A stretch of DNA of 64,000 nt, from assembly GCA_002269645.1 (NCBI GenBank), contig NIVC01003152.1:52354-116353 (forward strand), given 5' to 3'. The position numbers and the translations under genes were made by a program. The stretch comes from Macrostomum lignano (Eukaryota). The notes beneath the pieces are model-generated. The model saw nothing but the letters and a program-made list of their open reading frames with translations. It was not told the DNA's origin and ran no database searches. Of the stretch, positions 9,116 to 63,501 are shown piece after piece. How positions within the stretch are numbered: position 1 is the stretch's first letter; every line of letters begins with the position of its first letter.

Positions 9116-9196
9116 GAAGGCCTTTTCATTTCAATAGATGGAATGGCAGCGAAAAGTTTTGTGCTGCTTTGCGCATATATTCATATTTACGCATTA

Positions 9197-19319: not shown

Positions 19320-20791
19320 ATGGATAAAGAAAACGAAGAGTTAAATATTTTAGCAGACGGTAGTGAATTTGACGATCTATTAAAAGAGCTTGAAGGGCCT
19401 TGGCCCATGCAGCAAGATGAGCAAACTGAGCAACCACAGCCAGAGCGTTCAGCGCAGCAAAACGAGCAAGAACAGCTAGCTGAGGCCCCGTCGCAGCCGC
19501 CTGCTACGCAGCAGCCTGCCCGACGCTGGCACCGCCGTCAGAGCCATTACGGGAGCGTCAGCCAGCTGACCTGCCCGGGCCCTCGCAGCCACCGGAGCCC
19601 TCCACCAAGCCAAAGCGACCTGCTGCGGAAACGGATCAGGGTACACAAGCAAAGAGGCCGGCCCCGTCAGGGCTGCCAGTGTCCCAGGATCCGGCAGCAC
19701 GACAGGAGCTCGTTAGAGTAAAGTCGGTGCAGTCCGTGGTGGTAAAACCGACGGTGATGCAGAGGCACCCGGCTGGCGCGCGGCCCACACTGATGTTAGC
19801 TGCCCCGCCTCAGCAGCAGCGGCCGGCTCAGCGGTCGCAGCCTCGGCGTGTGGCGTCGCGAGCAGAAGTCCGACAGCAGCTGCCAGTGCACCGCAGGCTG
19901 GCTCCGCGGCCGCCGCCGCAGCAGCGCCAGCAGTCGCCGCCGCAGCGCCGCCACCAGTCTCCGCCGCGGCACCGTCAGCAGCCACCGCCGTCTCAGCACC
20001 GTCAGCAGCCACCGCCGTCTCAGCATCATCAGCAGCCACCGCCGTCTCAGCATCATCAGCAGCCACCGCCGTCTCAGCATCATCAGCAGCCACCGCCGCC
20101 TCAGCATCATCAGCAGCCACCGCCGTCTCAGCATCATCAGCAGCCACCGCCGTCTCAGCATCATCAGCAGCCACCGCCGTCTCAGCATCATCAGCAGCCA
20201 CCGCCGTCTCAGCATCATCAGCAGCCACCGCCGTCTCAGCATCATCAGCAGCCACCGCCGTCTCAGCATCATCAGCAGCCACCGCCGTCTCAGCATCATC
20301 AGCAGCCACCGCCGTCGCATCAGCAGCCGCCACCGCAGACTGCAGTGCCACCACAGGCGTCAACCTGCCGTGCAGCTGCAAGTTATTTGTTTGCCCCCGG
20401 CAACCAAGACATCCAAAGGCTTGCTGCGATGGGCGCCGACTTCAGCGCCATCATGGACGGTTTGTCGCCAGAACAGCAGGCAAGAATGAAGCGACTGATT
20501 GCTGCCCTGAAGGAATATCTAATGCGAATCGGCCACTTGCGGTTGGACCGGCCGCTGCCACAGCGGGCCCAGGTCCGGCCAGCCTGCATTGTGCTTCGCC
20601 AAGAATTCACGCCTGAGCAAGCTGTCGCGGCTTGGCGCCGCGCCGTGAATTACGTACTTCATGACCTGAATGCGGCTGGCCAGCCGTACTTTCGCACGCT
20701 GCTTATCATCGAGATTAAGTGGCTCGCCGAGCAAGTCGGATGGCCTCTACGCGACCTTTTGCCGGACGAATTTAATCTGAATGATAATTAG
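19320..20791 (+). CDS. Accessory ORF3 of the Gypsy element (~490 aa if one base lost near 19520 is restored): acidic N-terminus, P/Q-rich linker, QQPPPSQHH repeats, ~140-aa helical C-terminal domain
   Basis: The two ORF-track ORFs overlap in adjacent frames; the second frame is open 19484-20791, and joining at ~19520 gives a compositionally continuous protein. No signal peptide or TM segment, so not env-like. Confidence 0.7.
19976..20338 (+). repeat. 27-bp coding tandem repeat (QQPPPSQHH, about 13 copies)
   Basis: CAGCAGCCACCGCCGTCTCAGCATCAT units, nearly invariant. Confidence 0.92.
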
Positions 20792-37922: not shown

Positions 37923-38668
37923 TATTGCTAATCTAGCTGACATGATGAAGGCATTGAATGGATTGCTAATCTAGCCAACATCATGGATGAAGGAATAGAA
38001 TGGATTGCTAATCTAGCCAACATCATGAATGAAGGAATAGAATGGATTGCTAATCTAGCCAACATCATGAATGAAAGAATACAAGCTAGAATGGATTGCT
38101 AACCTAGCAAACATCATGAATGAAGGAATAGAATGGATTGCTAATCTAGCCATCAATATCATGGATGAAGGAATATAATGGATTGCTAATCTAGCCAAAC
38201 ATCATGAATGAAGGAATAGAATAGATTACTAATCTAGCCAACATCATGGATGAAGGAATAGAATGGATTGCTAATCTAGCCAACATCATGAATGAAGGAA
38301 TAAAATGGATTGCTAATCTAGCCAACATCATGAATGAAAGAATACAAGCTAGAATGGATTGCTAATCTAGCCAACATCATGAATGAAGGAATAGAATGGA
38401 TTGCTAATCTAGCCATCAACATCAGGGATGAAGAAATAGAATGGATTGCTAATCTAGCCATCAACATCATGGATGAAGAAATAGAATGGATTGCTAATCC
38501 AGCCAACATCATGGATGAAGGAATAGAATGGAGTGCTAATCTAGCCAACATCATTGATGAAGAAATAGAATGGATTGCTAATCTAGCCAACATCATGGAT
38601 GAAGAAATAGAATGGATTGCTAATCTAGCCATCAACATCAGGGATGAAGAAATAGAATGGATTGCTAA
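37923..38668 (+). repeat. 42-bp dispersed minisatellite, array 1
   Basis: GAATGGATTGCTAATCTAGCCAACATCATGGATGAAGGAATA units. Confidence 0.92.
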
Positions 38669-40654
38669 TGATGAGGACGCACTTTTTCCCAAATCCCGCG
38701 CTAGCGCATGGGCTCGAAACTTACTAGCCTACTAACAGTGGGCGATGGGCATTTTTATCCTTTTTCTGCGAATAGTCATAGAATCTATACTAGATATAAT
38801 GTCTGGCCATACTAGTAGTCATAATAACATAGGCATTGCTTTTTGGGTCATAAATCATCGCTTTCGAAGCTGGTCTGACAGCCACCTGCGCCTCACTCAG
38901 TGTTGAGACGGGCGCCAGATGGTCTGAGAGGATGCGGGCGGTAGCTTTTTTCTCATCATTTTGACAGGCCATCAAGATTTATGAGGTCAGAGCCTATTGT
39001 TCGGATTCACTCAAGCGTGTGACAGCTTTGACAGCTATGCGTTTTACCCCTAAAAGTACTTTGGGATTAGCAATTAGCGATTTCTCTTCATTATCTTCAC
39101 TTTCTATTTAATAAGAGCTTTCTAATGTATATTTTTTCATTAATTTCTGTCAATCCTACGCGAAAAGTCATAAATCATTTTGTTGCGATTTTGAGTGATT
39201 TATGGCCGCACCTGTCATCTTTTTACGACCCTGTGGGAACTGATAGGATCTCTCGGTCACGTGATTCTGGGTGGCAACAAGCTTAGCCAATCAGAAAATT
39301 CGGCGCTCATTTTAACAAAACGGCTCAGCCAATCAGAATCGACGTGTTCCATTATAACAAAATGCGGTCCAGTTGGCGGCTATTTAAACCGGAGTTTTTG
39401 GCCCGCTCGGACACACCTCTTGCTCGGGTCCAGCACGCAACTTCTGGTTCCCGGAGCGCGACCGTCGTTTCTTGATCCCCGGATTGCGACTTCCCCCCAT
39501 CATCATCAAGGACGAATCCCCCGGTCGTCAGCAGCGAACATCAAGCGAAGATCATCACCTGCTAGCTATCAGCGAAGATTGTGTCAGCATCATCCCGAGT
39601 CTACAGCTACAGAGCATCAAGCCGATTCGGTCACTGTGGATTACCTGGTCTCCGGCTGTTGAGTTTCTGATTGGTTGGGTGAGAGGCTACCTAGACTTGC
39701 TTGATTGGGTGATCCCCTATCTGTCCCCTGTTTCAGTAGCTGAGTTAGGCGCACACTTTTGCTCATTTTGTTCAGCAGTGCTGTTACCGAGGCAGAAATC
39801 ATTCAATAATACTGCTAGTAGTCTGAAACTCCAATTTGATCCGAAGTGTGAAGTGATCTAAGGAGAAGGTTAAATCTGACAGTTATTTTTATCGGTTTTA
39901 GTTCTTTGTTCGCCGATGGCTCAGATGAGTAGCTAAGCTAGTAGGCGCCGGTCACAGTGGACCAATGGCAAGGCGGTTCTCAGTCGATCAATCAATCAAA
40001 TCAGTGAGCAAAACTGCCAGAAGTGCAGAATCGGCGCCAGAGATGTACTTTGTGCACTCTGGGTTAGCCAAGCGGCTCGGGTAATGAATCATGCGGTCTC
40101 TGAAGTTCGAGTTAGTCTATCATCAGCGCTATGAGAGGCTAGTTGGCGCGTTGAAGGCCAAAAGTACCTATCTTCGTATTTAGCAATCTAATAGTACATG
40201 TAGCTACCCCATAGACTCGCCACTGCAAGAATTCCCTGCACAAGTCCCCTCTGTACCTGCATGGCCAATGCGATCTAGTCCCAGCAGTGTTCCTTATCAT
40301 CGGCTATGACTTCGAGATTGACAGCAAAAAGACACTAGTTGGCAGGTAAGTGCAAAGCCCCTTCTAGTCGGAAGCCCGATTTCGAGAGTCCCGGTGTGGT
40401 GAGCCAGGACGCACGGGCTGGTGGCAGCGAGTTAGCTTAACTGCGGATTAGCTAATTTCTACCTTCAAAATTCTCCCTGCTTGTCTCTCGCTGTCCCTCT
40501 CTTAGCTATAGGACCTAGACTGCTCGCCACACGATCAAGCTACCATGGGGCTGACCATCTGACAGGAGTGGGGGGCCAGGACTCTAATTGATTTATTTCT
40601 GAGGCCTGAGGCCCGAAGGCTTCCTAACAAGGGGCCCGAAGGTCGAAACCCATC

Positions 40655-45984: not shown

Positions 45985-47660
45985 TTACTCTTCCGCCGGA
46001 AAATCTGAATCCATCGAAGCCGATCTCAGCGGATTGTACGAACCGGGAGGTTGCGAACGGCTCATATTGATAATAGTCCGACTGAACGTCTTGCGAGCCT
46101 GTCGATACTTAAAGTACATGTGGTGCAGCACGAACAGCAGGCAGGCCAGGAGGCACAGCAGGCCAGGTATGGCCAAACTGAACAGAGTGGCCTGTGTGGC
46201 CAGGCTTGGCATAATGCCAGGCGGGATAAACAATGTCACAATGTTGACGAGAATTGCCAGAGTCAGAACCCAGGAGAAAATTGCGATTGTTGCTTTGCTC
46301 ACGTGACCGACGACCTTGGAATGGTGCAGGAATTGAGGGTGATTCGTTCCAGGGTTTTTTGTAACAATCCAGCTATACTTATATCTAACACTACATCTGA
46401 ATTAAGACGGGGTCAATTGACCTTCGAGACTTGAAGTAAAGATCATGTACTCACATTCATAACCGGCTCCCATTCCTTCCTGGAGAACTTCGAGATCAAC
46501 CTAAGTTCACCTTCGGCTTCGCTTTTAGTCATTGGCAGATCCGAATCCTCTTCAACAATGTTGAGCGGCGAGTTGGCTCGCTGCCAACGGATGCTCAGGT
46601 GCGAATCAAGCAGCACCATCAGAGCCATCGCTATGACGTTAACGTACATCAATAGGGCCGCTATCCTCTGCAAGGTCAGCTGGTAGCCTTGCGGTGGCGT
46701 CTGCAATTTATTAGCGTAACTTGCTTGATTTCACTTGCCTCACAAAAAGGCTTGACGTGAAAATAAGTATGAGCAAATAAAATGAATTGCTAATCTAGCC
46801 AAACATCATGGATGAAGGAATAGAATGAATTGCTAATCTAACCAACATCATGAATGAAGGAACAGAATGGATTGCTAATCTAGCCAAACATCATGAATGA
46901 AGGAACAGAATGGATTGCTAATCTAGCCAACATCATGAATGAAGGAACAGAATGGATTGCTAATCTAGCCAAACATCATGGATGAAGGAATAGAATGGAT
47001 TGCTAGTCTAGCCATCAACATCATCATGGATGAAGGAATAGAATGGATTGCTAATCTAGCCAAACATCATGGATGAAGGAATAGAATGGATTGCTAGTCT
47101 AGCCATCAACATCATCATAGATGAAGGAATAGAATGGATTGCTAATCTAGCCAAACATCATGAATGAAGGAACAGAATGGATTGCTAATCTAGCCAACAT
47201 CATGAATGAAGGAACAGAATGGATTGCTAATCTAGCCATCAACACCATGAATGAAGGAACAGAATGGATTGCTAATCTAGCCATCAACATCATGAATGAA
47301 GGAACAGAATGGATTGCTAATCTAGCCAAACAGGCTCAAACACAAAGCAACACAGCCATACCTCAGAATTAGTCTCAGTCCTATGCAGTACAACCAGGCA
47401 TCCAATGTGCACCAGCAGACCAATGCAAAAGTACACTGTAGTCCAGTGCCGTCTCACAAAACTTCTCATAGTCTCCTCTGCAAGGGAGTTATCGATTGTG
47501 AAAACTGGCTGATCATCCGGCATTTTTCGGTAGCTTGAAAGGTTCCGTAGTACTTTTATAATATGTTGGCTACGAGCTAATAAATCTTTGAGTCGTCCAG
47601 CTCCGATGACGAGTTGACAAGCAAATTTTAACGATACAAAATTCTTTTTAATCAAACAGT
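45985..47660 (-). CDS. Uncharacterised multi-pass membrane protein, last three exons 47660-47362, 46700-46455, 46314-45985; N-terminus not resolved
   Basis: Canonical AG/GT sites with phase-0 junctions (GAG|GTATGG, AAT|GTGAGT) join three ORFs carrying about four hydrophobic segments and a polar C-tail. Confidence 0.65.
46783..47330 (+). repeat. 42-bp dispersed minisatellite, array 3 (intronic)
   Basis: Same unit; starts ATGAATTGCTAATCTAGCC. Confidence 0.92.
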
Positions 47661-48764: not shown

Positions 48765-49269
48765 AAAAAGTTTTAACTTGAAATAAAAAACTAACTAACT
48801 CGTACAAATAACTTTTGCTTGTGTGCACCTGTTATCTGAGTTCTGCCTGCCCCTCTCTCCACATGGCAACTGATTAAAAAAGCCAAAACTATAAGAGCTT
48901 TTCTCTTCACTAGCTTAAAAACTTCACTTTCTTGTCCACTGCTACAGTTTCTTTCTGTTTAGCATGTCTGAAAGTCAGGGTAAGTTCGTCGCTTTGTTTA
49001 ATTTCTCTAATCTAAAATTATACAGCATTCTTCAGATTTAATATTATAATATTGTAAAAAAAATTAATACGTAAATTTTTTGCTGCATTACAATTTATTG
49101 TTCAACTGATTATTAATACTAACTGTTGAGTTTTATATTTGTAAATGAAAAGGAATGGAGTCGGTAGAAAATATGTAAAGTGTCGCTAGAAGTGTCTGTC
49201 GAGGTGTCTCTGAAAGGTTTTCAAGGCTTTGAAAAGCTTTCATTGTCAATGAAAGGGTTAATAGATGCA

Positions 49270-50636
49270 TCGGTCGATGTGTCGCTAGATGTGTCGTTAG
49301 ATGTGTCGGTAGATGTGTTGGTAGATGTGTCGCTAGATGTGTCGTTAGATGTGTCGGTAGATGTGTCGGTAGATGTGTCGGTTGATGTGTCGGTAGATGT
49401 GTCGGTACATGTGTCGGTTGATGTGTCGGTAGATGTGCCCGTAGATGTGTCGGTAGATGTGTCGGTAGATGTGCCCGTAGATGTGTCGGTTGATGTGTCG
49501 GTAGATGTGTCGGTTGATGTGTCGGTAGATGTGTCGGTAGATGTGTCGTTAGATGTGTCGGTAGATGTGTCGGTAGATGTGTCGTTAGATGTGTTGGTAG
49601 ATGTGTCGGTAGATGTGTTGGTAGATGTGTCGTTAGATGTGTCGGTAGATGTGTCGCTAGATGTGTCGGTAGATGTGTCGGTAGATGTGTCGCTAGATGT
49701 GTCGTTAGATGTGTCGGTAGACGTGTCGGTAGATGTGTCGCTAGATGTGTCGTTAGATGTGTCGGTAGATGTGTCGGTAGATGTGTCGCTAGATGTGTCG
49801 TTAGATGTGTCGGTAGATGTGTCGGTAGATGTGTCGGTAGATGTGTCGTTAGATGTGTTGGTAGATGTGTCGGTAGATGTGTTGGTAGATGTGTCGTTAG
49901 ATGTGTCGGTAGATGTGTCGCTAGATGTGTCGGTAGATGTGTCGGTAGATGTGTCGCTAGATGTGTCGTTAGATGTGTCGGTAGACGTGTCGGTAGATGT
50001 GTCGCTAGATGTGTCGTTAGATGTGTCGGTAGATGTGTCGGTAGATGTGTCGGTAGATGTGTCGTTAGATGTGTTGGTAGATGTGTCGGTAGATGTGTCG
50101 GTTGATGTGTCGGTAGATGTGTCGGTAGATGTGCCCGTAGATGTGTCGGTAGATGTGTCGGTAGATGTGCCCGTAGATGTGTCGGTTGATGTGTCGGTAG
50201 ATGTGTCGGTTGATGTGTCGGTAGATGTGTCGGTAGATGTGTCGTTAGATGTGTCGGTAGATGTGTCGGTAGATGTGTCGTTAGATGTGTTGGTAGATGT
50301 GTCGGTAGATGTGTTGGTAGATGTGTCGTTAGATGTGTCGGTAGATGTGTCGCTAGATGTGTCGGTAGATGTGTCGGTAGATGTGTCGCTAGATGTGTCG
50401 TTAGATGTGTCGGTAGATGTGTCGGTAGATGTGTCGGTAGATGTGTCGTTAGATGTGTCGGTAGATGTGTCGGTAGATGTGTCGGTAGATGTGTCGTTAG
50501 ATGTGTTGGTAGATGTGTCGGTAGATGTGTCGTTAGATGTGTCGGTAGATGTGTCGGTAGATGTGTCGGTAGATGTGTCGTTAGATGTGTCGGTAGATGT
50601 GTCGGTAGATGTGTCGGTAGATGTGTCGGTAGATGT
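49270..50636 (+). repeat. 12-bp minisatellite (over 100 copies) in intron 1 of the SDR gene
   Basis: GTAGATGTGTCG units; explains the 495/502-aa low-complexity ORFs. Confidence 0.96.
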
Positions 50637-51684
50637 ACCATGGTACCGGCATAAGTGTCGGTGGTAGCATCAGCAAAACTGGACGCATAAATTTGTTACA
50701 AGCTCAGCATCGCAATAATTTAGTCAGCTGACTGCATCCTCCCAGGCTTAGTTTTACTGACTGGAGCAACCGGCTTTATTGGCAGCCACGTTGCCAAGCT
50801 GTTGCTGGGCGATGGATACAGCTTGCGAGTGACCGCGCGAAATTTGACTTCCAATCAAAACGTCAAGGTAATTTTTCTTGTGAAATATAGATCAGAGTAT
50901 TGGATTATGGAAATTTCGCTCAGCGACGTTCGCGCATAAGTTTATATAGCTATTTATAGATTAATCTGGAAATGAAATTAGAGCCTAAACCCCTTTAATG
51001 TTTAGAAATAGCATTTGAGGTAAGAAAAGAAATGTTTATTTTGGATGGTGTAGCTCGTAAGATACTCAGAGCCTTTCTGAAAATATGTTTCGGAAAAAAC
51101 ACAGAAGGACCACCGTACATTGTCGCTAGAGACCCGTTCTATAAGACACACTATAGCGAGAATGTACAGTGTTGCAGTTGTACATTGTCCCTACACTTTG
51201 GTTATCCATGGCCATTAAGTTGGGAATGATCTGGGAAAGAAGAATCTACCAGCCAGCATCGATGTGACACTTAAGGTCAAATATCGTAGACGCTTATCAT
51301 CTACTATTTTGACTGTAATCAATACTAGGTGAGCCAGCTCAAAGCTGCTTTGTCCGAGTATCCGAGCGATAGAATCGAGTTTGTCGAAGCCGACCTGCTA
51401 GACCAGACCGTCAGCTGGACGCAGTTAGTCAGCGGCTGTCAGTACGTTGTCCACGTGGCCAGCAGTTTGCCAGAGAGGGTGCCGAAAACTCAAGCCGAGG
51501 CCGATGTCACCCTGCGGACAGCCATCGGCGGCACCAGAGCCATCATTGAAGCCGTGGCCGCTACAAAATCTGTCAAAAAGCTGGTTGTAACATCCTCGGT
51601 AGCCAGCATTGCAGGTTTGTTTTTTGACCTCTAACTTTTTACGAGAAGGTATTAACTACGAGCGTAGATAAGAAGTAGAGTAGG

Positions 51685-52008
51685 GACGTTAGAGTCGGCA
51701 ACAGGGACCTTAGACTCTGTTGCAGTGACGTTAGAGTCGGCAACAGGGACCTTAGACTCTGTTGCAGTTACGTTAGAGTCGGCAACAGGGACCTTAGACT
51801 CTGTTGCAGTGACGTTAGACTCGGCAACAGGGACCTTAGACTCAGTGACGTTAGACTCGGAAACAGGGACCTTAGACTCAGTGATGTTAGACTCGGCAAC
51901 AGGGACCTTAGACTCTGTTGCAGTGACGTTAGACTCTGTTGCAGTGACGTTAGACTCGGCAACAGGGACGTTACACTCTGTTGCAGTGACGTTAGACTCG
52001 GCAACAGT
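51685..52008 (+). repeat. ~42-bp intronic tandem repeat with internal inverted repeat
   Basis: GTGACGTTAGACTCGGCAACAGGGACCTTAGACTCTGTTGCA (GCAACAG / CTGTTGC). Confidence 0.88.
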
Positions 52009-53841
52009 GGAACCATAGCATAATTCTATCGAACAAGTATCTATATGCTGTTGGAATTCATTAAAGCATTTGTCCGAACTACATATAACGCCCCACCGCA
52101 GGCATCATGGGTACCAGAGGCCGGATCTATGACGAGACGGTCTGGTTCGACACCAACAACAGGCCGCTCGGACTGACTTACGAAACCAGCAAAACCCTGG
52201 CCGAGAAAGAGGCCTGGCGATTGTTCAAGGATATTAAGAGTAAAAGCTGCGATAACTTCTAATGTTCTCTGTATGACTGCCTGTGCATGTATGATAGCAC
52301 ATGCTGCCTGAACACTTGGCCCGCGTTGTTTATATTATAACATCCTGTTCCCCTGCGCAAGTATGCCTCACTTGCATTATTTTCGCAAACTTGTTAAAAC
52401 AAAATTGCATTAGTCATTGTGTCCTGCCCGCATATCTCTGCCACTAGAACGCCACGCCCGTAATTTGTTTATATGATTTTGAATTCTAAACTAGCTACAA
52501 TAACTATCAGCATATACGTGACTTTAAAACGTTGGGAAATTATAATTTCAGAAAGAAATCATTTGTTCACAAAAATGATGCGATATACGAGCTAGAATTT
52601 AAAATTTATAAGTTCTATCGACTGAACAGACATTGATTGACCCCTAATCAAACACTTTCGCTAGAAGTACGGTTAGGCTGTTAGACTAAAAGGTTTTTTG
52701 TATTGGTAGGTTGCTAAGAACGCTATAAAGAGACGCCGTCAATTTAAGCTTATAAAGGTGAATTTCCGACGTCTACGACTGTACATGACGATGATGATAT
52801 CTAATGCGATATTCAAGGAAAAACACGCATCTTCGATAGTGAGGCTCTGTAATATGTGTATGCTGTGCTCAAACTACTTTAAGCCTAATTTTTAACTCCT
52901 CGATTCCTCGTTGAAAATCAACAGCGTTGAGCAAGCACCCAGAAAGTGAATAGGCAACTCAGAGTGCAGTTTTCTATTTCTATTCAGAGATTAATGGATT
53001 AAGTATTTATCAAGAGAATCGCCCCGCAGACCCGCACTTCAGTTTGGTGTGCATCAACCCAGGCGTGGTCATTGGGCCGCTGCTCGCCCAGAGCACCTAC
53101 AGCACTCAGATCGGCGCCGGATATGCTTTTCCGGCTGATTGGCTACTTCCGGTCGGACGTCACCCAACTACTGTTCGGTCTGGGCTGCGAGACTGTCTAC
53201 GACAATTCTAAGGTACAAGTTAAGACAATATTAAATGGCCAATTCAATTTGTTCAAGTGGTTGCCTGTTAAGTCTGTTTTTGAGCAAGAGACACCTCAGA
53301 TATGAAAACGGAAAGCGGCACTGAAAGATAGATAAATAGATACATAGATAAACAAATAAATAAATAAATAAATAAATAAATACATACATACATACATAAA
53401 TAGATAGATAGATAGATAGATAGATAGGTAGATAGTAGATAGCGAGAAAGAGCGAGCGAAGCGAGCTCTTTCGAGCTTGCTTGCCGCAGCCAATCAAGCT
53501 GAAAGCACGCACAAAAGATCACCGGAAACGATTAAGGCAGCTGGAAAGCCAATGGGCGCGGTAAGCGCTTTTATCCAGAGGAACTACCTGCTGGAACCAG
53601 CCATGCCGAACAAAAATCAGACTACTCAAGTAGTGCAAAAGAGTGCGAGCAACTACCGAGAAATCTAATTTTCGTAACCGCAAGTGGTTGCAAGTGGTTC
53701 AAGTGGTTGCCTGTTAAGTCTGTTTTTGAGCAAGGGACACCTCAGATATGAAAGCGGAAAGCGGCACTGAAAGATAGATAAATAGATACATAGATAAACA
53801 AATAAATAAATAAATAAATAAATACATACATACATACATAA

Positions 53842-54113
<272 letters not shown>

Positions 54114-54660
54114 ATGTAGATGTAGATGTTGGATTTTTTAGTGTTTATAAAGGCCAGTTTGTCTCAAAAAGTAGTTATCTATAAACTTAGGCCTTCATGC
54201 TTGTATACATGTAGCTACTCTGACTTTTTTTGCTTCAGATGCGCGAGCTGCTCCGAGTGCAGCCGATGGACCTGACCCAGAGCGTCCTGGACACCGCTCA
54301 CAGTTTAATCCGACACGGTCACGCTGCCTTGACGCCGCAGTACGCTGCCAAATATCCCGAAGCGGAGGGTCTTTCAGCGAATCGTTATTGACTTTTATTG
54401 CTTCAATACGACTAAGAAGATTATACTCAAAGATTGCCACTATTGATTTTGAATTTTAGCGTACCAACCAACGCAGACGGTCGATTCAAAAAGCACAATA
54501 TATGCGACAAGTTAGTCAGCATAAAGCTTCTATGCCTGAGTGGTCGTAACGCCCACACAATAAGTTTATTTAGTTTTCAGTCAGTGCTTTTATGCTTGAA
54601 AATCATTCAAGTCTATGTGATGCGAGGCCAACACGGAGCGATGCGTCAAACTAGTCGGAA

Positions 54661-55493
54661 TCAGTCGCGCGGCCTGCGACCGTGAGGCCTAAACAGCGGC
54701 CCAAACGGACGCTTCTTGCGATCCGAATCCGGGTGAGGCGGGTGCCTGGGCCGGAACAGGGCGCCGAAAGGGCGCTTGCTCAGGTGGCGCGGCCGGCACA
54801 CCCAGCGACAGCCGGCATCGTCTGGCTCGTCTTCCGGGCTGGAACGTTTTTTTTCGGAGGAAATTGTGCCAATTATGGCTGTGAGGCGTGGACATTTCGT
54901 AGGTACAATGGCACGAATTTGAGCCACGAGGGCCAACTCCCAAGGCACAGAGAGTGTACATGCTGTGTATGAGTGCGTGCCTGTGTACAGTGTGTGCTCA
55001 GGAGTCAGCGGAATAGGTAGAATTGCTTCAGAACTGGATGTGAGACCATGTGCTCCGGAATGAGCACAATCCTACTGCGAGCATTATTATTGTACGCATT
55101 ATTATTAGGGCTGACACAACGATGCATCGAGAAAGAAAGAATCTATGTAAACTAGCACAACGGATGTTATCTACAGATTGCATGTGCACACAAAGACACC
55201 TCAGAATAGAATACATTAACCTTTAATTTCAAAGGTTCCATTGGTCGAGTACGCCTATTTAGTAGCAAATCCATTCTAAAAAAAGCTTTTACCCTTCAGC
55301 CATTTCGTCCCAATCAGGATCTGAAATTGCAGGAAAATTATGCATTCAATGATTGGAGTCTTTAAAAATTAACTAAAAAACGTGACTGCAATGCGACTGT
55401 ACGGAGGCACTCACGAGAGCCAGCTTCAACAGACCCGCAGTTAGCCCAGCACGCCAGCAGGCCAAGCAGAAGCAGGGTCCAAGCGAAACGCAT
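54661..55493 (-). CDS. Two-exon neuropeptide/secreted-peptide prohormone-like gene, 98 aa; exons 55493-55415 and 54878-54661
   Basis: Exon 1 MRFAWTLLLLGLLACWANCGSVEAGS with C|GTGAGT (phase 1); acceptor CACAG|CC is phase-matched. Exon 2 has KKR, KR, RKKR and GRR sites flanking two PFG(A/P)LFRP paracopies. TATAAAA at 55611-55605 and AATAAA at 54570-54565. Confidence 0.78.
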
Positions 55494-57244
55494 TCTCAGT
55501 GTCGCTGAAAAATTCTTCTATTTTCTCTTCCTGGTTCTCGACTCCTTCCGTTGCGAGTTTGAGTTATCCTACCGGATCGACTCAGACTGCAGGAGCTGCC
55601 TCCATTTTATAGTTGAGCTCAAGTTCCGGAATTGGACGCCAACAAGCCTTCCAGTTTCCAATCGGGTGTTTACAGCTTGAAGATTAGCCCATGCCATGGT
55701 CCTTGGTGGCTGGGAAAGAAAGAAATCGGCAAGTTAACACACAGAAAGCCAAGGCTTAGTAGACTCAAGCGGAGGTCGGAAGCGGGATTCCGGTCGTCTA
55801 TTTTGGAGCCGCAAATTAACAAGGAATTAGGGAGCTTAGGCCATTGCTGATCAGCCAAAGCAAGCCCTGGCACTGTCAGGATACAGTCAGCCAGTATATC
55901 CCCACTCTGGGAAGCAATTTTCTTTTGTGTCTCACCCCTCATCCGTCAATTTCTTGTCAGGAATTATTCTGCGCCTTGCCTGGTCCAAGTTGGGGAGCGG
56001 CTACATGCATTTTATCGCGCCCTCTGGGCTGCATCACGCAAAATCCAGTTAGATTGGAAAAAAAACTTGAGAGAAAATGGGCTGCTTACCACAAATGTCT
56101 TTAAAAATAACTTCAATTCGATCGTTACGAAAGTAATGAAATGCATTCTAAATTACAGCTGCATCGTATGTCGTTATACATATATACGTTATTTATATTG
56201 ATTCGTATATAAAAATGTTTTAGCTCCGAGTTATATAGTTACTTATGTCCCACCATGGAGGCATATATACAGATAGTGATGAAGCAATAGAGTGCCAGAC
56301 CACAATTTATACAGAAACTGCAGTAAGTCATATTACGGCCAAAACGTTCTCTGCAGGAAATCTGCGGCCCAAGTTTGCCTATATTTGCCTAATTCGCCTC
56401 GTAGTAGCCTTGAGTAATGATGTCGAAGCGTTGAATAAGTGAGCGTACAGCATGGACAGTCTCAAAACATAGCGCGCACTGTACACAGCTAGGCATTGTA
56501 CTAGGAATTTTGCAAGCCTCCTATGCTTCTAAAAGAAAGAGATAAATGCGCTGTACACCTAGCAAAAAGTGGAACTTTGCTTCTTTTAATGTCACAATAT
56601 ATTTGAGAGGACCGTATTTTAATTCGACAGACCTTGCTACTTCAAGTAGGGCTAATAGAATGTTAACTGCCGAAGTATTTTTAGTTCAATAGCATACATT
56701 CGTTAATTTGCTCCAAAATTTTAATTACTCCACATTAAAAGCATGTGGCAAAAAAGCGTTTGTGTTATCTATTTTTAAAGTTCACTCGGTTTTTTGATTC
56801 AAGATTCAGAGCTGGAGACACGGAATTGCGCAGAAGACAAAAAGATCATTTCGTTGTCAAGGAGATCCAAACAGCGAATAAACAAAATAATTTTGCATAG
56901 CAAGTTAAGCAAAAATTCAAGGCAACATGCTTTCTCGAGCTTATCTGGTCCACAGCCACCGACAGAAGCATTTTCGCATTTTAGAGCGGAGTGCGAAATT
57001 ATCCGTACGAAGTAAAATATTCAGTACGAGCTAATGGCTACGCTCAAAAAAGAAAGAGATTTGACTGTTCGATCTTATCGTTGGATCGGGTCAGCAAGAT
57101 ATTTACATATAAAGGGACAGTGAAGAGCTGAGCGCAGCTTGACCGAGACACTCTTCTGACACACCAGCTATATTTGAACTGCTGCCAGGTAAGTTAATAG
57201 GCCTTTTTACTGGACATCTAAGATCATGGAACACTATCTGTGAT

Positions 57245-57652: not shown

Positions 57653-60600
57653 ATGTCCGAAGAGAAGAAGGAATTCAGCTCCACTCTTGGTATCGTGTTC
57701 TCGTGCATGGGCACGGTGGTTGGCACAGGCAATGTGTGGCGATTTCCGAGAATAGCAGCCCAGAACAGCGCTAGCCAAGGGACGCTGATCTTCTTGATTA
57801 CCTGGATGCTGTTTCTCTTCATCTGGTCCAGTCCAATGCTGCTCATTGAGTACGTCATCGGTCGGTATTATAAAAAAACTCCAATTCAAAGTTTTCAACG
57901 GGCCATGGGCGACAAATTCATTTGGTGCGGAGGCTGGGTGTCGTCAGTTACCTTCTTCATCAGGCAAGTTTATATGGGCATGATTTCATTTGAAAATCTG
58001 GCAACCTATTGCATTACCAGTAATTTATTAGCTTACTAAGTTAATAATTACTTCCATAGGCCTACAACAACAATAAGAATCGATTTTAAATCCACGATGT
58101 CGATGGCTAGATTAGCAATCCATTCTATTCTTTTATCCATGATTTTGGCTAGATTAGCAATCCACTTTATTTCCTCATCCATGATTTTGGCTAGATTAGC
58201 AATCCATTCTATTCTTTCATCCATGATTTTGGCTAGATTAGCAATCCATTTTATTTCCTCATCCATGATTTTGGCTAGATTAGCAATCCATTCTATTCCT
58301 TCATCGATGATCTTTGGCTAGATTAGCAATCCATTCTATTCCTTCATCCATTGACGTTTTTAGCTAGATTAGCAATCCATTCTATTCCTTCATCCATTGA
58401 CGTTTTTAGCTAGATTAGCAATCCATTCTGTTCCTTCATCCATTGACGTTTTTAGCTAGATTAGCAATCCATTCTATTCCTTCATCCATTGACGTTTTTA
58501 GCTAGATTAGCAATCCATTCTATTCCTTCATCCATTGACGTTTTTAGCTAGATTAGCAATCCATTTTATTTCCTCATCCATGATTTTGGCTAGATTAGCA
58601 ATCCATTCTATTCTTTCATCCATGATTTTGGCTAGATTAGCAATCCATTTTATTTCCTCATCCATGATTTTGGCTAGATTAGCAATCCATTCTATTCCTT
58701 TATCGATGATCGATGATCCATTCTATTCCTTCATCCATTGACGTTTTTAGCTAGATTAGCAATCCATTCTATTCCTTCATCGATGATCTTTGGCTAGATT
58801 AGCAATCCATTCTATTCCTTCATCCATGAAGCTGGCTAGATTAGCAATCCATTCTATTCCTTCATTCATGATGTTGGCTAGATTAGCAATCCATTCTGTT
58901 CCTTCATCCATTGATGTAGGCTAGATTAGCAATCCATTCTATTCCTTCATCCATTGACGTTTTTAGCTAGATTAGCAATCCATTCTATTCCTTCATCCAT
59001 GAAGCTGGCTAGATTAGCAATCCATTCTATTCCTTCATTCATGATGTTGGCTAGATTAGCAATCCATTCTATTCCTTCATTCATGATGTTGGCTAGATTA
59101 GCAATCCATTCTATTCCTTCATCCATTGACGTTTTTAGCTAGATTAGCAATCCATTCTATTCCTTCATCCATGAAGCTGGCTAGATTAGCAATCCATTCT
59201 ATTCCTTCATTCATGATGTTGGCTAGATTAGCAATCCATTGTGTTCCTTCATCCATTGATGTAGGCTAGATTGGCAATTCATTCATATTCATTTACCTGT
59301 AGCAATATGTAACGTAGCAATATGTAACAAAACGTAACTAACGATCGATAGCCCCAACTCTTCAACACTGCAGCTGCTATTACGCGGTCATCCTAGGTTG
59401 GTGCTTGTACTACCTGTACGAGATGATCCGCCTCTGCATTGTAAGCGAACTACCGCAGACTGAAGAGGAGAGCGCATTGATTTTCGATAATCTCACGGTG
59501 AGGCAGATAGGCGTGTGGACACATAGTTCAGACAGTTCTTAATACGACTTATGCTACTCGTACTCAAAATCAATATCGATTTCGTTGCCTACCAGAACTC
59601 AGCCTGGCCAGCGCTGTTCCATGGCTTAGCAATCTTTTTGGCTGGGGCCTGCGTCATTGGCGGCATCACGTGGATCGAGAAGGTGAACTTGGTGCTGGTG
59701 CCCACCCTGCTAGTGATCATTGTGGTGACGTACACCTGGTCGGTGCTGCAGCCGTTTGGCGACTACGGCATCCGGTTTCTGTTCACCCCGGATGTAGGTA
59801 AGTTCATAATACTGGAATGCAAATGATAACATTGACTCAGAATTCAGAAACGTACATGTAATTGCAGAGACAGTTTTTTATCTGTTGTGTTTTGCACCAA
59901 GGGGTTTTAGCACCAAAGCACCAAGGGGCTTTAGCACCAAGGGGCTTTAGCATTAGCACCAAGGGGCTTTAGCACCAAAGGGCTTTAGCACCATGGGGCT
60001 TTAGCACCAAAGCACCAAGGGGCTTTAGCACCAAGGGGCTTTAGCACCAAGGGGCTTTAGCACCAAGGGGCTTTAGCACCAAGGGGCTTTAGCACCAAGG
60101 GGCTTTAGCACCAAGGGGCTTTAGCACCAAGGGGCTTTAGCACCAAGGGGCTTTAGCACCAAGGGGCTTTAGCACCAAGGGGCTTTAGCACCAAGGGGCT
60201 TTAGCACCAAGGGGCTTTAGCACCAAGGGGCTTTAGCACCAAGGGGCTTTAGCACCAAGGGGCTTTAGCACCAAGGGGCTTTAGCACCAAGGGGCTTTAG
60301 CACCAAGGGGCTTTAGCACCAAGGGGCTTTAGCACCAAGGGGCTTTAGCACCAAGGGGCTTTAGCACCAAGGGGCTTTAGCACCAAGGGGCTTTAGCACC
60401 AAGGGGCTTTAGCACCAAGGGGCTTTAGCACCAAGGGGCTTTAGCACCAAGGGGCTTTAGCACCAAGGGGCTTTAGCACCAAGGGGCTTTAGCACCAAGG
60501 GGCTTTAGCACCAAGGGGCTTTAGCACCAAGGGGCTTTAGCACCAAGGGGCTTTAGCACCAAGGGGCTTTAGCACCAAGGGGCTTTAGCACCAAGGGGCT

Positions 60601-63501
60601 TTAGCACCAAGGGGCTTTAGCACCAAGGGGCTTTAGCACCAAGGGGCTTTAGCACCAAGGGGCTTTAGCACCAAGGGGCTTTAGCACCAAGGGGCTTTAG
60701 CACCAAGGGGCTTTAGCACCAAGGGGCTTTAGCACCAAGGGGCTTTAGCACCAAGGGGCTTTAGCACCAAGGGGCTTTAGCACCAAGGGGCTTTAGCACC
60801 AAGGGGCTTTAGCACCAAGGGGCTTTAGCACCAAGGGGCTTTAGCACCAAGGGGCTTTAGCACCAAGGGGCTTTAGCACCAAGGGGCTTTAGCACCAAGG
60901 GGCTTTAGCACCAAGGGGCGCTAGCACCAAGATGTGCCAGCACCAAGGGGCGCCAGCACCAAGGGGCTTTAGCACCAAGGGGCTTTAGCACCAAGGGGCT
61001 TTAGCACCAAGGGGCTTTAGCACCAAGGGGCGCTAGCACCAAGATGTGCCAGCACCAAGGGGCGCCAGCACCAAGGGGCACTAAAGTAGTTGCTGGGGAT
61101 CTGCTTAAATTGATAGCAGTGTGGCCAAACGTGCCCCTGCCATAATATATGCCAGCCTATTCGCGTGGGAGGGCGGCCCCCATGATCCCCTGGGGTACGC
61201 GTTTTCGCTGATTAAATTTCAAGCGGGTGTCCCGTGAGAAGACAGCAGAGAAGTTTATGTTGGAAAGATTTCACTCGCGTCACTCGCTGCATTCTGCAAA
61301 CCTTGCTGGCCTCTATGTATGCAATTTTAAAAGTACCAGAGATTTCTTCCAACACCACTACAGAATCGTTGTCAAACGCAAAACTGTGGGTGGACGCGCT
61401 AACGCAGAATGCTTTCGACACGGGCGCTGCCATGGGTCTGATTGTCCCGTACGCCACGTACATGAGCGCCAAAAATGGCGTTGTGAAATTTGCCACAATG
61501 ATTCCTCTTATGAACAATCTTGTCAGGTAAGCCGACAAGATATCACATGGAGAATTAAAGTAATATTGCTAAAACACTGACCAAATTTTATCCAGAAGCA
61601 AGCATTTACTAATATTAAAATCCCCAACAACTCATAATGCAGCCTCATCTGCGCCATCACAATATTCGGCACAGTGTTCTCCACCCTGGTTAACAGCAAC
61701 CCGAGCTTGTCCCGCACCGGTATCGTTGAGATCATTAAAACCACTGGGCCAGCATCCACCGGACTCACCTTCGTGTGGATTCCCATCCTGTTCGGCAGCC
61801 TGGGGGTCGTTGGCAAATTATTGTGCATCATGTTCTTTCTGTGCCTGTGCTTTGCCGGACTCAGCACAGTCATTGCGGATGTTGAGCACACATCGCAGAC
61901 GCTGTGCAACTTTGGGCGTAAGTGAAAACCAACTGCTGTTAAATGTTACAGAGATGGTTGAGAAGACATGCTGATCTAAATATAAAAGAAAAATGATGGT
62001 GATAATGATGATAATTGCACTGTCAACCGTTGTCGCAGTTTCCAGACGCCTGGCGACCCCGGTGTGCGGACTGCTCATGTTCTCTATTGGGCTGCCCTCC
62101 GCACTCAGCATTCAAGTGTTGGACAATCAGGTTAAAATTTATATAATATAAGCATTTCTCGAATTGGTTACTTCATATTCGTAGACCCCCCCCCACTAGG
62201 CTTGATTCTCCCAGTAAGAATTACAAGTAAAGTGCTTGCTCCCAGGCTCAATTGGCCTGGAAAGTATGCATTTTATCATACTTATTTAAACATCTCCAAA
62301 AACCGTACAGGATTTCATCTGGGGCTTCGCTCTGCTTCCGTCCGGCCTGATGTTTCAAGCGCTGGTCTTCAAAGTAGGCTGGAATACGTTCAAAGAGGAC
62401 ATGGTTAACAAGTACGGAATCGGTGACTGGCCGCTGACGAACGTCACCATGGTGATTATTCTGTGAGTTTATGAATGAGAGTCTTGGCCTATACTGCATA
62501 GGAAGCCTCTTAACGGTTACCAGAATTACCTGAATCGATTTTTTGAATGTCGACCAAGACAAGTTGAGTTTCTATTCTTTGATCAACTTTAACAGCTCTG
62601 AAAATCTGGTTAACGTAGCAAACACAAATCATCTTCAATAGAAATCTGGGATGCTGAAAAATCGATTTAAAAATTTTTCAGCATCGTTGCTCCAATCGAA
62701 GCGATCGCCCTGCTAATCTGGTGGATTTATGACGAGATATCCGCCACAGCGGACAATGACCCGGGATCGCGCTGGTACGACTTCGGACTGGAAACGCTGA
62801 TGACCTGCTTTGTTACGGTAAGTTTCAAAGCGCATGTCATTTTTTCCGACAAATTGGATTATTTTGTTTTACTGTCAATAATAATGCTATTGCTTGCTTG
62901 TGTGTTTCTGTTGTTTTTGCTGTTGTTTTTATGTTTTTGCGACCCTAGATAGGGACCCAGAGAAGGACCTCCATGGGTCGCTCTATGGGGTCACCATCAC
63001 AAACTCGAAAAATCACATCGTCGAAAAGTTTAGCAACCACCATCGCAAGCTCGAAAAGGCACAAGCTCCAACCCTAACCCTAACCCTTTTCGAGCTTGTG
63101 ATGGTTGTTGCTAAACTTTTCGACGATGTGATTTTTCGAGTTTGTGATGTGACTCCGCTCTATAGACTTGGTCAGGATCCATCGGAATTATGAAGCACCA
63201 TCATATTCTCTGTTCCTGTTGTTGTCGCGCTTTTGTTATTTTCAGTGATGCTGATGATGCTGTTATTGTTACCGTATGTATAATAGCCAAACTCCTACAT
63301 CCTGTCTCGCAGTGGATCGCACTGATAATTCTGCTGGTGATCTGCAACGTAATCGCGTACCACATCCGACCCAGCTGGATGCGCCAATCCAACCGCGTCG
63401 GTGACGTCAGCAGCACTGTCGACGCCGAAGCCGGCGACATCGGGATGAAGTCAATGTCGCTGGATGAGAAGCGAACGCCAGGGACGAAGCCAGTCCCATA
63501 G
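57653..63501 (+). CDS. SLC6/NSS sodium-dependent transporter (prokaryote-like subfamily); exons 57653-57963, 59374-59497, 59596-59797, 61364-61526, 61643-61917, 62039-62130, 62311-62462, 62682-62817, 63313-63501
   Basis: GTGNVWRFP, E..IGR, YYAVILGW, IEKVNLVLVP, WVDALTQNAFDTG, TGLTFVWIP, FFLCLCFAGLST. All eight junction phases are consistent. TATA-like CATATAAAG near 57107 and a non-coding exon ending CAG|GTAAGT at 57188. Confidence 0.92.
58097..59281 (-). repeat. 42-bp dispersed minisatellite, array 4 (inverted, intronic)
   Basis: GGCTAGATTAGCAATCCATTCTATTCCTTCATCCATGATGTT units, the reverse complement of arrays 1-3. Confidence 0.92.
59895..61078 (+). repeat. 16-bp homogeneous minisatellite (about 70 copies) in SLC6 intron
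   Basis: CACCAAGGGGCTTTAG units, variants only at the edges. Confidence 0.96.
62990..63152. repeat. Intronic palindrome (~65-bp arms) with a telomere-like loop
   Basis: 62996-63059 pairs with 63085-63148 (2 mismatches); loop contains AACCCTAACCCTAACCC. Confidence 0.85.

What the first reader, a model, noticed from the sequence alone, without database searches (positions are those of the whole stretch)
54565..55611. Hidden neuropeptide prohormone gene encoding PFGxLFRP peptides
Splicing a signal-peptide exon not present in the ORF track to a phase-matched second exon gives MRFAWTLLLLGLLACWANCGSVEAGSPIIGTISSE-KKR-SSPEDEPDDAGCRWVCRPRHLS-KR-PFGALFRPRHPPHPDSD-RKKR-PFGPLFRPH-GRR-PRD. Basic convertase sites, a Gly amidation donor (PFGPLFRPH-amide), two paracopies and a CxxxC peptide are prohormone hallmarks. 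TATA and poly(A) signals are correctly placed. I cannot assign the PFGxLFRP motif to a known peptide family.
Basis: partly seen in the sequence, partly recalled or inferred. Interest (0 to 1): 0.7.

Follow-up and report, generated by a model that had tools for sequence, protein, structure and literature searches.

The report
Annotated flatworm gene, candidate peptide precursor

Summary
The window is Macrostomum lignano contig NIVC01003152.1:52354-116353. The region holds a minus-strand gene already annotated as hypothetical protein BOX15_Mlig024080g2 (PAA53004.1, 94 aa).

**Exon structure.** The junction 55415/54878 is not the annotated one. The RNA-seq-derived model has three exons:
- 55493-55415
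- a 28-nt micro-exon, 55320-55293
- 54838-54661

So "PIIGTISSE-KKR-SS" is intronic and the first KKR site does not exist.

**Prohormone architecture.** It survives:
- a leader peptide
- an acidic spacer (net charge -9)
- CRWVC
- KR-PFGALFRPRHPPHPDSD-RKKR-PFGPLFRPH-G-RR-PRD

The two KRPFGxLFRP units differ at 9 of 30 nucleotides but in only 1 amino acid (P about 2e-5), which indicates selection on the peptide.

**Family.** No homologue or family was found. A validated planarian precursor used as a control is equally an orphan by the same search. The core resembles F-x-P-R-x of PRXamide/neuromedin U and sea-anemone LFRPamide, but neither copy meets those families' defining C-terminus.

**Open points.** Expression site, processing and receptor are untested.

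**Verdict.** An ordinary, already annotated gene and a plausible lineage-restricted peptide precursor, of modest interest.

The parts
55605..55611 (-). TATAAAA box, 118 nt upstream of the ATG
   Evidence: Read directly. Distance computed. The 5' flank and UTR are 97.5% conserved in paralogue g3. Its function as a promoter is inferred.
55415..55493 (-). Exon 1 coding part. It encodes MRFAWTLLLLGLLACWANCGSVEAGS plus the first base of the next codon (phase 1). It is the signal peptide, with predicted cleavage VEA|GS (residues 1-24 = 55493-55422).
   Evidence: Identical to the N-terminus of PAA53004.1. The hydrophobic core has Kyte-Doolittle about 2.3. Only leader peptides match it in the PDB.
55321..55414 (-). 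Intron 1 (94 nt, GTGAGT...TTTCAG)
   Evidence: 8/93 mismatches to paralogue g3, against 2.1% in the CDS.
55293..55320 (-). It shifts the phase from 1 to 2.
   Evidence: needed to reproduce the GenBank protein. 0/28 mismatches among the three gene copies. Good acceptor (TTTTCCTGCAATTTCAG|) and donor (AAGG|GTAAAA).
54839..55292 (-). Intron 2 (454 nt).
Evidence: 35/361 mismatches plus 93 gap columns against g3.
54661..54838 (-). Exon 3 coding part. It encodes PEDEPDDAG-CRWVC-RPRHLS-KR-PFGALFRPRHPPHPDSD-RKKR-PFGPLFRPH-G-RR-PRD-stop (TGA at 54663-54661).
54796..54810 (-). CRWVC (Cys46-x3-Cys50), a possible small disulfide loop at the end of the N-terminal propeptide. It reads CHWVC in copy g1.
   Evidence: The disulfide is inferred.
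54721..54777 (-). KR (54777-54772) plus paracopy 1, PFGALFRPRHPPHPDSD (54771-54721). It has no Gly amidation donor and contains an F-R-P-R-H core.
54709..54720 (-). RKKR, a furin/PC-type cleavage site between the paracopies
   Evidence: Cleavage is inferred from the established R-X-K/R-R convertase consensus.
54673..54708 (-). Paracopy 2, PFGPLFRPH (54708-54682), then Gly (54681-54679) and RR (54678-54673). The predicted product is PFGPLFRPH-NH2 (monoisotopic mass 1065.587).
   Evidence: Amidation is inferred.
54565..54570 (-). AATAAA poly(A) signal, 91 nt after the stop codon

Best explanation
The locus is the M. lignano gene Mlig024080.g2. It is a TATA-driven, three-exon gene (79 + 28 + 178 coding nt) on the minus strand, and it makes a 94-aa secretory preproprotein.

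**Most likely mechanism**
1. The leader is removed in the ER, around VEA|GS.
2. Subtilisin-like proprotein convertases cut after K57-R58, R76-K-K-R79 and R90-R91.
3. A carboxypeptidase trims the basic residues.
4. Peptidylglycine amidating monooxygenase converts PFGPLFRPH-Gly into PFGPLFRPH-NH2.

**Expected products**
- An acidic N-terminal propeptide ending in a CRWVC loop.
- PFGALFRPRHPPHPDSD.
- PFGPLFRPH-amide.
- The tripeptide PRD.

The two PFGxLFRP peptides are the selected, presumably bioactive, parts. They most likely act as secreted signalling peptides (neuropeptide or peptide hormone) on a GPCR.

**Shown:** the gene, its transcript-derived exon structure, the reading frame, the leader-like N-terminus, the sites and repeats, and amino-acid-level selection on KRPFGxLFRP.

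**Inferred:** cleavage, amidation, neuronal or secretory-cell expression, and a receptor.
For: - The window is identical to NIVC01003152.1 (0 mismatches over 19,340 nt). The three-exon translation equals PAA53004.1.
- GenBank models of this assembly come from RNA-seq (StringTie/TACO plus de novo transcripts plus TransDecoder; PMC5730564).
- Three gene copies in conserved synteny all encode the micro-exon form.
- Copy g2 against g3: CDS 6/285 mismatches against introns 43/454, Fisher p = 5e-5.
- The paracopies differ at 9/30 nt (7 at third codon positions) but at 1/10 residues, P = 2e-5. 6 of the 7 identical residues use different codons.
- All 3 non-synonymous differences among the copies lie outside the cores, the basic sites and the leader.
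- Anatomy: hydrophobic leader, spacer of net charge -9, dibasic sites directly before both copies, and G-RR after copy 2.
- A PC2 homologue is expressed in the M. lignano nervous system and is essential (PMC4490696).
- The control Smed-ppl-1 shows that a bona fide flatworm prohormone is just as much an orphan in the same search.
Against: - No expression, peptidomic or receptor data could be found for this gene.
- No homologue exists outside the three near-identical intragenomic copies.
- Only one of the two copies has an amidation donor. A C-terminal His-amide is unusual (own knowledge).
- RKKR is a furin-type site that is also cut in the constitutive pathway, so processing does not imply a neuron.
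- The C-terminal half (net charge +12, 10 Pro and 12 Arg in 49 aa) equally fits a cationic host-defence peptide preceded by an anionic propiece.
- No signal-peptide predictor was available. The leader call rests on hydropathy and the -3/-1 rule.
Confidence: 0.55

Rival explanations
1. The reader's two-exon isoform (55415 joined to 54878, 98 aa, with an extra PIIGTISSE peptide and a KKR site) is the main, or a significant alternative, product.
For: The join is in frame, with a GT...AG intron. The 40 nt it would add are 39/40 conserved in g3.
Against: All three GenBank models, which derive from RNA-seq, carry the micro-exon form. A search with the 98-aa sequence found no 98-aa protein in 5.8 billion sequences. 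In g3 the KKR becomes KNR. The conservation of the 40 nt is equally expected for the branch-point and acceptor region of an intron.
Confidence: 0.05
2. It is the precursor of a cationic, proline/arginine-rich host-defence (antimicrobial) peptide. An anionic propiece neutralises a +12 C-terminal region, which furin-type cleavage releases in epithelial or gland cells.
For: The spacer has net charge -9. The C-terminal 49 aa have net charge +12, with 10 Pro, 12 Arg and 4 His. RPRHPPHP recalls the PRPPHPR-type motifs of insect proline-rich antimicrobial peptides (own knowledge, not tested). The gene is lineage-restricted, as immune effectors often are.
Against: Selection is focused on a short, repeated motif with a hydrophobic core that is directly flanked by cleavage sites, and there is a Gly-RR amidation signal. 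Those features are more typical of signalling peptides. The released fragments would be short (9 and 17 aa), and one carries an acidic tail (DSD). No proline-rich antimicrobial peptides are known from flatworms (own knowledge).
Confidence: 0.12
3. It is a non-neuronal exocrine product, for example of prostate, seminal-fluid, adhesive or pharyngeal gland cells. It is a fast-evolving Macrostomum-specific secreted protein, processed by furin or not at all.
For: It is orphan, small and secreted. Macrostomum has many rapidly evolving reproduction-related secreted genes that escape homology detection (PMC10468722). RKKR is a furin site.
Against: The gene identifier does not appear in the supplementary tables held as text for two Macrostomum positional RNA-seq papers. 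That is weak evidence, because the tables may be truncated or use other identifiers. The amidation signal and the paracopy organisation point to a processed peptide.
Confidence: 0.15
4. It is a divergent member of the bilaterian PRXamide family (pyrokinin/CAPA/hugin/neuromedin U). The F-R-P-R-H core of copy 1 and the F-R-P-H-amide of copy 2 descend from F-x-P-R-x-amide and act on an NMU/pyrokinin-type GPCR. This is a special case of the best explanation.
For: LFRPR is identical to the NMU core FLFRPRN-NH2. F-R-P-R-H fits F-x-P-R-x. Flatworms do have PRXamide peptides: Smed-ppl-1 gives YFSPRM/L-amide. No canonical ppl-1-type protein of M. lignano was detected, though that search is insensitive.
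Against: The defining C-terminal P-R-X-Gly-basic is absent from both copies. Copy 1 continues with PPHPDSD, and copy 2 lacks the Arg. The PRXamide pharmacophore is the amidated C-terminus. The match was found post hoc and is five residues long, in an Arg/Pro/Leu/Phe-rich context. There is no precursor-level similarity.
Confidence: 0.12
5. The ORF is not functional: a chance ORF in a non-coding transcript.
For: It is very short, has no homologues and has no Pfam domain.
Against: The paracopies show amino-acid-level conservation despite 30% nucleotide divergence (P = 2e-5). There are 4 synonymous against 2 non-synonymous differences to g3, and exon divergence is 4-5 times lower than intron divergence. 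The leader, cleavage sites and amidation site form a coherent whole.
Confidence: 0.03

Closest known systems
GenBank PAA53004.1 / PAA61818.1 / PAA92260.1, hypothetical proteins BOX15_Mlig024080g2/g1/g3 of Macrostomum lignano (assembly GCA_002269645.1)
   Same: g2 is this very gene, with identical DNA and protein. g1 differs by R47H. g3 differs by A44D and H71R plus 4 synonymous changes. The synteny is the same: SNF transporter, then this gene, then NAD-epimerase/3beta-HSD.
   Different: The records carry no functional annotation. No paper in the searched library mentions the identifier or the peptide sequences.
PRXamide family: vertebrate neuromedin U/S (…FLFRPRN-NH2), insect pyrokinin/CAPA/hugin (FxPRL/V-NH2), Aplysia PRXamides (pQPPLPRY-NH2), planarian Smed-ppl-1 (YFSPRM/L-NH2)
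   Same: Copy 1 contains L-F-R-P-R, identical to the NMU core, and F-R-P-R-H fits F-x-P-R-x. It is a small multi-copy precursor with dibasic sites, like Smed-ppl-1.
   Different: The family is defined by a C-terminal P-R-X-amide. Here PRH is followed by PPHPDSD with no Gly. The amidated copy ends in ...F-R-P-H-NH2 and lacks the Arg. There is no precursor similarity.
Antho-RPamides of sea anemones (Antho-RPamide-4 GP-Hyp-SLFRP-NH2; Antho-RPamide-1 LPPGPLPRP-NH2)
   Same: They are Pro-rich short peptides with a G-P-x-L-F-R-P or G-P-L-P-R-P core, proven to be neuronal in cnidarians (PMC7523074). Compare GPLFRP and GALFRP here.
   Different: Those peptides end in RP-amide. Here RP is followed by His-Gly or Arg-His, so no RP-amide can form. 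That study found the family in Hexacorallia, and its authors report being unable to find RPamides in other classes. The animals are also very distant.
Planarian prohormone set (51 genes; npp, spp, mpl, ppl, ppp, npy and others; Collins et al. 2010, PMC2953531)
   Same: The general design is the same: leader, acidic spacers, short paracopies between dibasic sites, and Gly amidation donors. Many of those genes are also lineage-restricted.
   Different: None of those prohormones or their peptides contains LFRP, PFGP, PFGA, FGPLF or FGALF.
Proline/arginine-rich antimicrobial peptide precursors (e.g. apidaecin-type; recalled from own knowledge, not fetched)
   Same: An anionic propiece followed by a strongly cationic Pro/Arg/His-rich region, with repeated units separated by basic processing sites (composition).
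   Different: The conserved unit here has a hydrophobic F-G-x-L-F core and an amidation signal. No sequence comparison was run and no activity data exist.

Membership tests
Neuropeptide / peptide-hormone precursor (generic class) | N-terminal cleavable signal peptide | tested here: met
   M-R-F, then a 12-residue hydrophobic core (Kyte-Doolittle about 2.3), then V-E-A|G, which fits the -3/-1 rule. The only PDB similarities are to secretory leaders. No dedicated predictor was available.
Neuropeptide / peptide-hormone precursor (generic class) | Repeated short peptides delimited by di- or multibasic convertase sites | tested here: met
   KR|PFGALFRP...RKKR|PFGPLFRPH-G-RR. A comparable pattern arose in 1 of 100,000 shuffles.
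Neuropeptide / peptide-hormone precursor (generic class) | C-terminal Gly amidation donor followed by basic residues | tested here: met
   Present for copy 2 only (H-G-R-R, 54681-54673). Copy 1 has none.
Neuropeptide / peptide-hormone precursor (generic class) | Selective constraint concentrated on the mature peptide and its cleavage sites | tested here: met
   9/30 nucleotide against 1/10 amino-acid differences between paracopies, P = 2e-5. The non-synonymous differences among the gene copies all lie outside the cores and sites. The numbers are small.
Neuropeptide / peptide-hormone precursor (generic class) | Conservation of the peptides in related species | not testable with these tools
   Only the three intragenomic copies were found. 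The other Macrostomum genomes (GCA_950096795, GCA_950097015) are not in any searchable collection here. The control Smed-ppl-1 also finds only itself.
Neuropeptide / peptide-hormone precursor (generic class) | Expression in neurons or endocrine cells, and mature peptides detected | not testable with these tools
   There is no mention of the gene in the main text of any searched paper or in the supplements of five papers checked individually. No M. lignano cell atlas is in the library.
PRXamide (pyrokinin / CAPA / hugin / neuromedin U) | C-terminal P-R-X-NH2, that is P-R-X-Gly followed by a basic site in the precursor | tested here: not met
   Copy 1 reads F-R-P-R-H-P-P-H-P-D-S-D-RKKR, with no Gly. 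Copy 2 reads F-R-P-H-G-RR, with no Arg before the last residue.
PRXamide (pyrokinin / CAPA / hugin / neuromedin U) | Detectable precursor homology to a family member | tested here: inconclusive
   No hit to any PRXamide precursor. The planarian member itself has no detectable relatives by the same method, so the test has no power.
PRXamide (pyrokinin / CAPA / hugin / neuromedin U) | Activation of an NMU/pyrokinin-type GPCR | not testable with these tools
   This needs a receptor assay.
Antho-RPamide (cnidarian) | C-terminal Arg-Pro-NH2 (R-P-Gly-basic in the precursor) | tested here: not met
   RP is followed by R-H (copy 1) or H-G (copy 2).
Published planarian prohormone families (Collins et al. 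2010) | Shared mature-peptide motif | tested here: not met
   No occurrence of LFRP, FRPH, PFGP, PFGA, FGPLF or FGALF in the text or in 8 supplementary files. The flatworm surveys of McVeigh 2009 and Koziol 2016 could not be read.
Any Pfam family | Profile match | tested here: not met
   0 families at E <= 10 for either the 94-aa or the 98-aa product.
Proline/arginine-rich antimicrobial peptide precursor | Anionic propiece plus a cationic Pro/Arg-rich mature region | tested here: met
   Net charge -9 for residues 26-45 and +12 for residues 46-94, with 10 Pro and 12 Arg. This is composition only.
Proline/arginine-rich antimicrobial peptide precursor | Antimicrobial activity, and immune or epithelial expression | not testable with these tools
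   This needs bench assays.

The most novel reading that the evidence does not exclude
The gene encodes a strongly derived PRXamide/neuromedin-U-type peptide pair in an early-branching flatworm. The ancestral F-x-P-R-x-amide has split into a non-amidated F-R-P-R-H...extended form and a shortened F-R-P-H-amide form, and both still signal through an NMU/pyrokinin-type GPCR. This would be a PRXamide system whose pharmacophore no longer has the canonical amidated P-R-X end.
Probability: 0.1. Interest if true: 0.5.

Novelty: new member of a known kind. Interest (0 to 1): 0.3.

Why it matters
If expression and processing are confirmed, PFGxLFRP peptides would add one lineage-restricted signalling peptide to the small neuropeptide catalogue of Macrostomum lignano. 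M. lignano is a transgenic, regeneration-competent flatworm model in which knockdown of the convertase PC2 is lethal (PMC4490696). The peptides would also give a ligand candidate for orphan flatworm GPCRs, a receptor class discussed as anthelmintic drug targets.

For the scan itself there are three practical lessons:
- Reading raw sequence found a true gene and its frame, but missed a 28-nt micro-exon.
- The gene already has a transcript-derived GenBank model.
- Lack of homologues is uninformative for this class of genes.

Tried and rejected
- **Rfam and tRNA scans of the window.** Nothing found.
It gave only the 94-aa M. lignano cluster.
- **Exhaustive phmmer over 1.84 billion representatives.** It returned the gene itself plus P0004, a 615-aa tandem-repeat ORF from an unnamed metagenome contig. 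P0004 has no PFGxLFRP motif, and its score sums six weak repeats. Rejected as spurious.
- **Pfam and PDB sequence searches.** No family; only leader-peptide noise.
- **Literature motif searches.** No paper contains the peptides. Partial motifs led to Antho-RPamide and NMU, and both fail the defining C-terminus.
- **Planarian prohormone tables.** No match.
- **McVeigh 2009 (PMC2749192).** Not held.
- **Expression look-ups for Mlig024080.** None in the supplements of five M. lignano papers or in the full-text search. No M. lignano cell atlas was found.
- **Bacterial promoter/terminator scan.** Irrelevant for this eukaryotic locus.
- **Apelin/ELABELA-like reading of CRWVC-RPRHLSKRPF.** Considered from memory and dropped. 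It was not tested beyond the PDB search, which gave no such hit.
Uninformative at 1/40 mismatches.
Full report
**Origin of the window.**
- The window is eukaryotic and repeat-rich. It holds an LTR-retroelement pol ORF, LINE-like reverse-transcriptase fragments, and mini- and microsatellites. It has no tRNA genes and no Rfam hits.
- Fetching their loci showed that the last 19,340 bases of the window are identical, with 0 mismatches, to NIVC01003152.1 of assembly GCA_002269645.1. The window is therefore bases 52354-116353 of that contig and runs to its end.

**Checking the observation.**
- ATG at 55493.
- Exon-1 donor CTC|GTGAGT, with the last exon base at 55415.
- An AG at 54880-54879.
- TATAAAA at 55611-55605, 118 nt upstream of the ATG.
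- AATAAA at 54570-54565, 91 nt after the stop at 54663-54661.
- Both PFGxLFRP copies, the KR, RKKR and G-RR sites, and CRWVC.

**The splice junction is wrong.**
- In the window this corresponds to a 28-nt micro-exon, 55320-55293. Its acceptor is TTTTCCTGCAATTTCAG| and its donor is AAGG|GTAAAA.
- Exon 1 plus micro-exon plus exon 3 gives a 285-nt CDS whose product is identical to PAA53004.1.
- The micro-exon shifts the phase from 1 to 2. Only the combinations "micro-exon + 54838" and "skip + 54878" stay in frame.
- The GenBank annotation of this assembly is not ab initio. It derives from a genome-guided transcriptome built from StringTie and TACO on RNA-seq, mapped de novo transcripts and TransDecoder (PMC5730564).
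- No 98-aa isoform exists in the 5.8-billion-protein collection.
- I therefore take the three-exon model as the real product. A minor two-exon isoform cannot be excluded without junction counts.

**Independent support for the exon structure.**
- The three copies lie in the same synteny: SNF-family transporter, then this gene, then NAD-epimerase/3beta-HSD.
- g1 differs from the window by one base in the aligned 1.2 kb. g3 is more diverged.
- Against g3, the coding exons have 6/285 mismatches and no indels. The two introns have 43/454 mismatches plus 98 gap columns (Fisher p = 5e-5).
- The micro-exon is 28/28 identical.
For a segment next to an acceptor that is uninformative.

**Is the ORF a functional coding sequence?**
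- The two units KRPFGALFRP and KRPFGPLFRP differ at 9 of 30 nucleotides: 2, 0 and 7 by codon position.
- They differ at only one residue, and six of the seven identical core residues use different codons.
- With 9 random substitutions, at most one amino-acid change occurs with P = 2e-5.
- The duplication is therefore old, and the peptide, including its KR site, has been kept by selection in this frame.
- Between g2 and g3 there are 4 synonymous and 2 non-synonymous differences (A44D, H71R). g1 has R47H. All three replacements fall in the spacers or tails. The numbers are small but consistent.

**Anatomy of the product.**

| Residues | Content |
|---|---|
| 1-24/25 | Leader: M-R-F, hydrophobic core, V-E-A\|G-S |
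| 26-45 | Acidic spacer, net charge -9 |
| 46-50 | CRWVC |
| 51-56 | RPRHLS |
| 57-58 | KR |
| 59-75 | PFGALFRPRHPPHPDSD |
| 76-79 | RKKR |
| 80-88 | PFGPLFRPH |
| 89 | G |
| 90-91 | RR |
| 92-94 | PRD |

- Only 1 of 100,000 shuffles of the mature region gives two dibasic-preceded 8-mers that are at least 6/8 identical.
- The only PDB similarities are to secretory leaders of osteocalcin and Ig light chains. That is weak extra support for a leader.
- There is no Pfam family.

**Most likely mechanism.**
1. ER import and leader removal.
2. Cleavage by subtilisin-like convertases after KR58, RKKR79 and RR91.
3. Carboxypeptidase trimming of the basic residues.
4. Amidation of copy 2 to PFGPLFRPH-NH2.

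These steps follow from the established rules of prohormone processing. M. lignano has a PC2 homologue expressed in the nervous system whose knockdown is lethal (PMC4490696). None of the steps was shown for this protein.

I found no expression, peptidomic or functional data. The identifier and the peptide strings occur in no paper's main text and in none of the supplementary tables of five M. lignano papers.

**Relatives.**
- No homologue was found beyond the three copies, either by the word-indexed search or by exhaustive phmmer over 1.84 billion representatives. The one extra hit, P0004, is a repeat artefact.
- As a control I searched the validated planarian precursor Smed-ppl-1. It also finds only itself.
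- Orphan status therefore says nothing for or against a neuropeptide role. The other Macrostomum genomes are not in any collection available here.

**Comparison with known peptides.**
- No planarian prohormone of Collins et al. 2010 shares the motif.
- Two short-motif resemblances emerged from the literature:
  - Sea-anemone Antho-RPamide-4, GP-Hyp-SLFRP-NH2, and Antho-RPamide-1, LPPGPLPRP-NH2 (PMC7523074).
  - The PRXamide family. Neuromedin U ends in FLFRPRN-NH2, and planarian ppl-1 gives YFSPRM/L-NH2.
- Copy 1 contains L-F-R-P-R-H, which fits F-x-P-R-x and is identical to the NMU core over five residues.
- Both families are defined by their amidated C-terminus (RP-NH2 and P-R-X-NH2 respectively), and neither copy can yield one. 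Copy 1 continues with PPHPDSD and has no Gly. Copy 2 reads F-R-P-H-G-RR.
- Membership is therefore not supported. A derived PRXamide remains a low-probability lead (about 0.1).

**Rivals.**
- The C-terminal half is strongly cationic and Pro/Arg/His-rich (net charge +12) behind an anionic propiece. That also fits a host-defence peptide precursor.
- RKKR is a furin site, so a non-neuronal gland product is also possible.
- A non-functional ORF is unlikely given the selection signal.
- The probabilities for each rival are given in the rival explanations.

**Verdict.**
It is a prohormone-like precursor, but with a different exon structure, one cleavage site fewer, no evidence yet for neuronal expression, and it is not hidden.
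- It is at most a new, lineage-restricted member of a known kind, of modest interest.

Noticed in passing
window 13302-18946 (+): A Ty3/gypsy-type LTR retroelement with an uninterrupted 1535-aa pol ORF and a 299-aa gag-like ORF upstream. The pol ORF has aspartyl protease, RT, RNase H, integrase zinc-binding and integrase core domains, all above the Pfam cut-offs. It is possibly a young, intact element.
   Followed up: partly
window 127-2028 (+) and 9143-9784 (+): A non-LTR reverse-transcriptase fragment (RVT_1) and a downstream ORF. The ORF's C-terminal half (…SEALPDxQRAALFQAVIETVLLYNAETWTLTDSLE…) recurs at 9143-9784. These are two copies of one LINE-like family, sitting in GC-rich islands (0.57-0.62, against about 0.44 elsewhere).
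   Followed up: partly
window 19679-20791 (+): A 370-aa ORF just after the retroelement pol, with about 20 tandem QPPPSQHH units. It has no Pfam match. Whether it belongs to the element is unknown.
   Followed up: no
window 49262-50636: A 12/24-nt minisatellite (57 copies, 92% matches). It lies inside the range of the annotated epimerase/3beta-HSD gene (window about 48964-53211, +). It produces artefactual ORFs of about 500 aa on both strands (THLP and VDVS repeats).
   Followed up: partly
window 46781-47332, 58104-59290, 38334-38735: A 42-43-nt satellite (AATGGATTGCTAATCTAGCC…) occurs on one side of the peptide gene, and its reverse complement occurs on the other side, inside the SNF transporter gene range (57653-63501). 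The ORF at 38334-38735 (repeats of IEWIANLANIMDEE) appears, from its translation, to be a third copy of the same repeat.
   Followed up: no
window 53326-53442 and 53772-54112: Long (AGAT)n microsatellites about 450 nt downstream of the peptide gene's poly(A) signal. They explain the IYLSIYL-type ORFs in the ORF list.
   Followed up: no
window 54838-55415 (-): Two different in-frame splice paths exist through the gene: the 28-nt micro-exon plus the acceptor at 54838, or skipping it and using the acceptor at 54878. They differ by 12 nt. Only the first is annotated. Whether the second is ever used is open.
   Followed up: partly
loci L001, L002, L003 (NIVC01001994.1, NIVC01000059.1, NIVC01003152.1): The whole neighbourhood (adh_short gene, SNF transporter, peptide gene, epimerase) is present three times in the assembly. 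The copies are 97-100% identical in the 1.2 kb compared. This fits the reported large-scale duplication in the DV1 line (PMC5730564).
   Followed up: partly
method control (Smed-ppl-1, P0005): The validated planarian pyrokinin-like prohormone finds no relative other than itself among 5.8 billion proteins at E <= 10. Homology searches of this type have essentially no power for flatworm neuropeptide precursors.
   Followed up: yes
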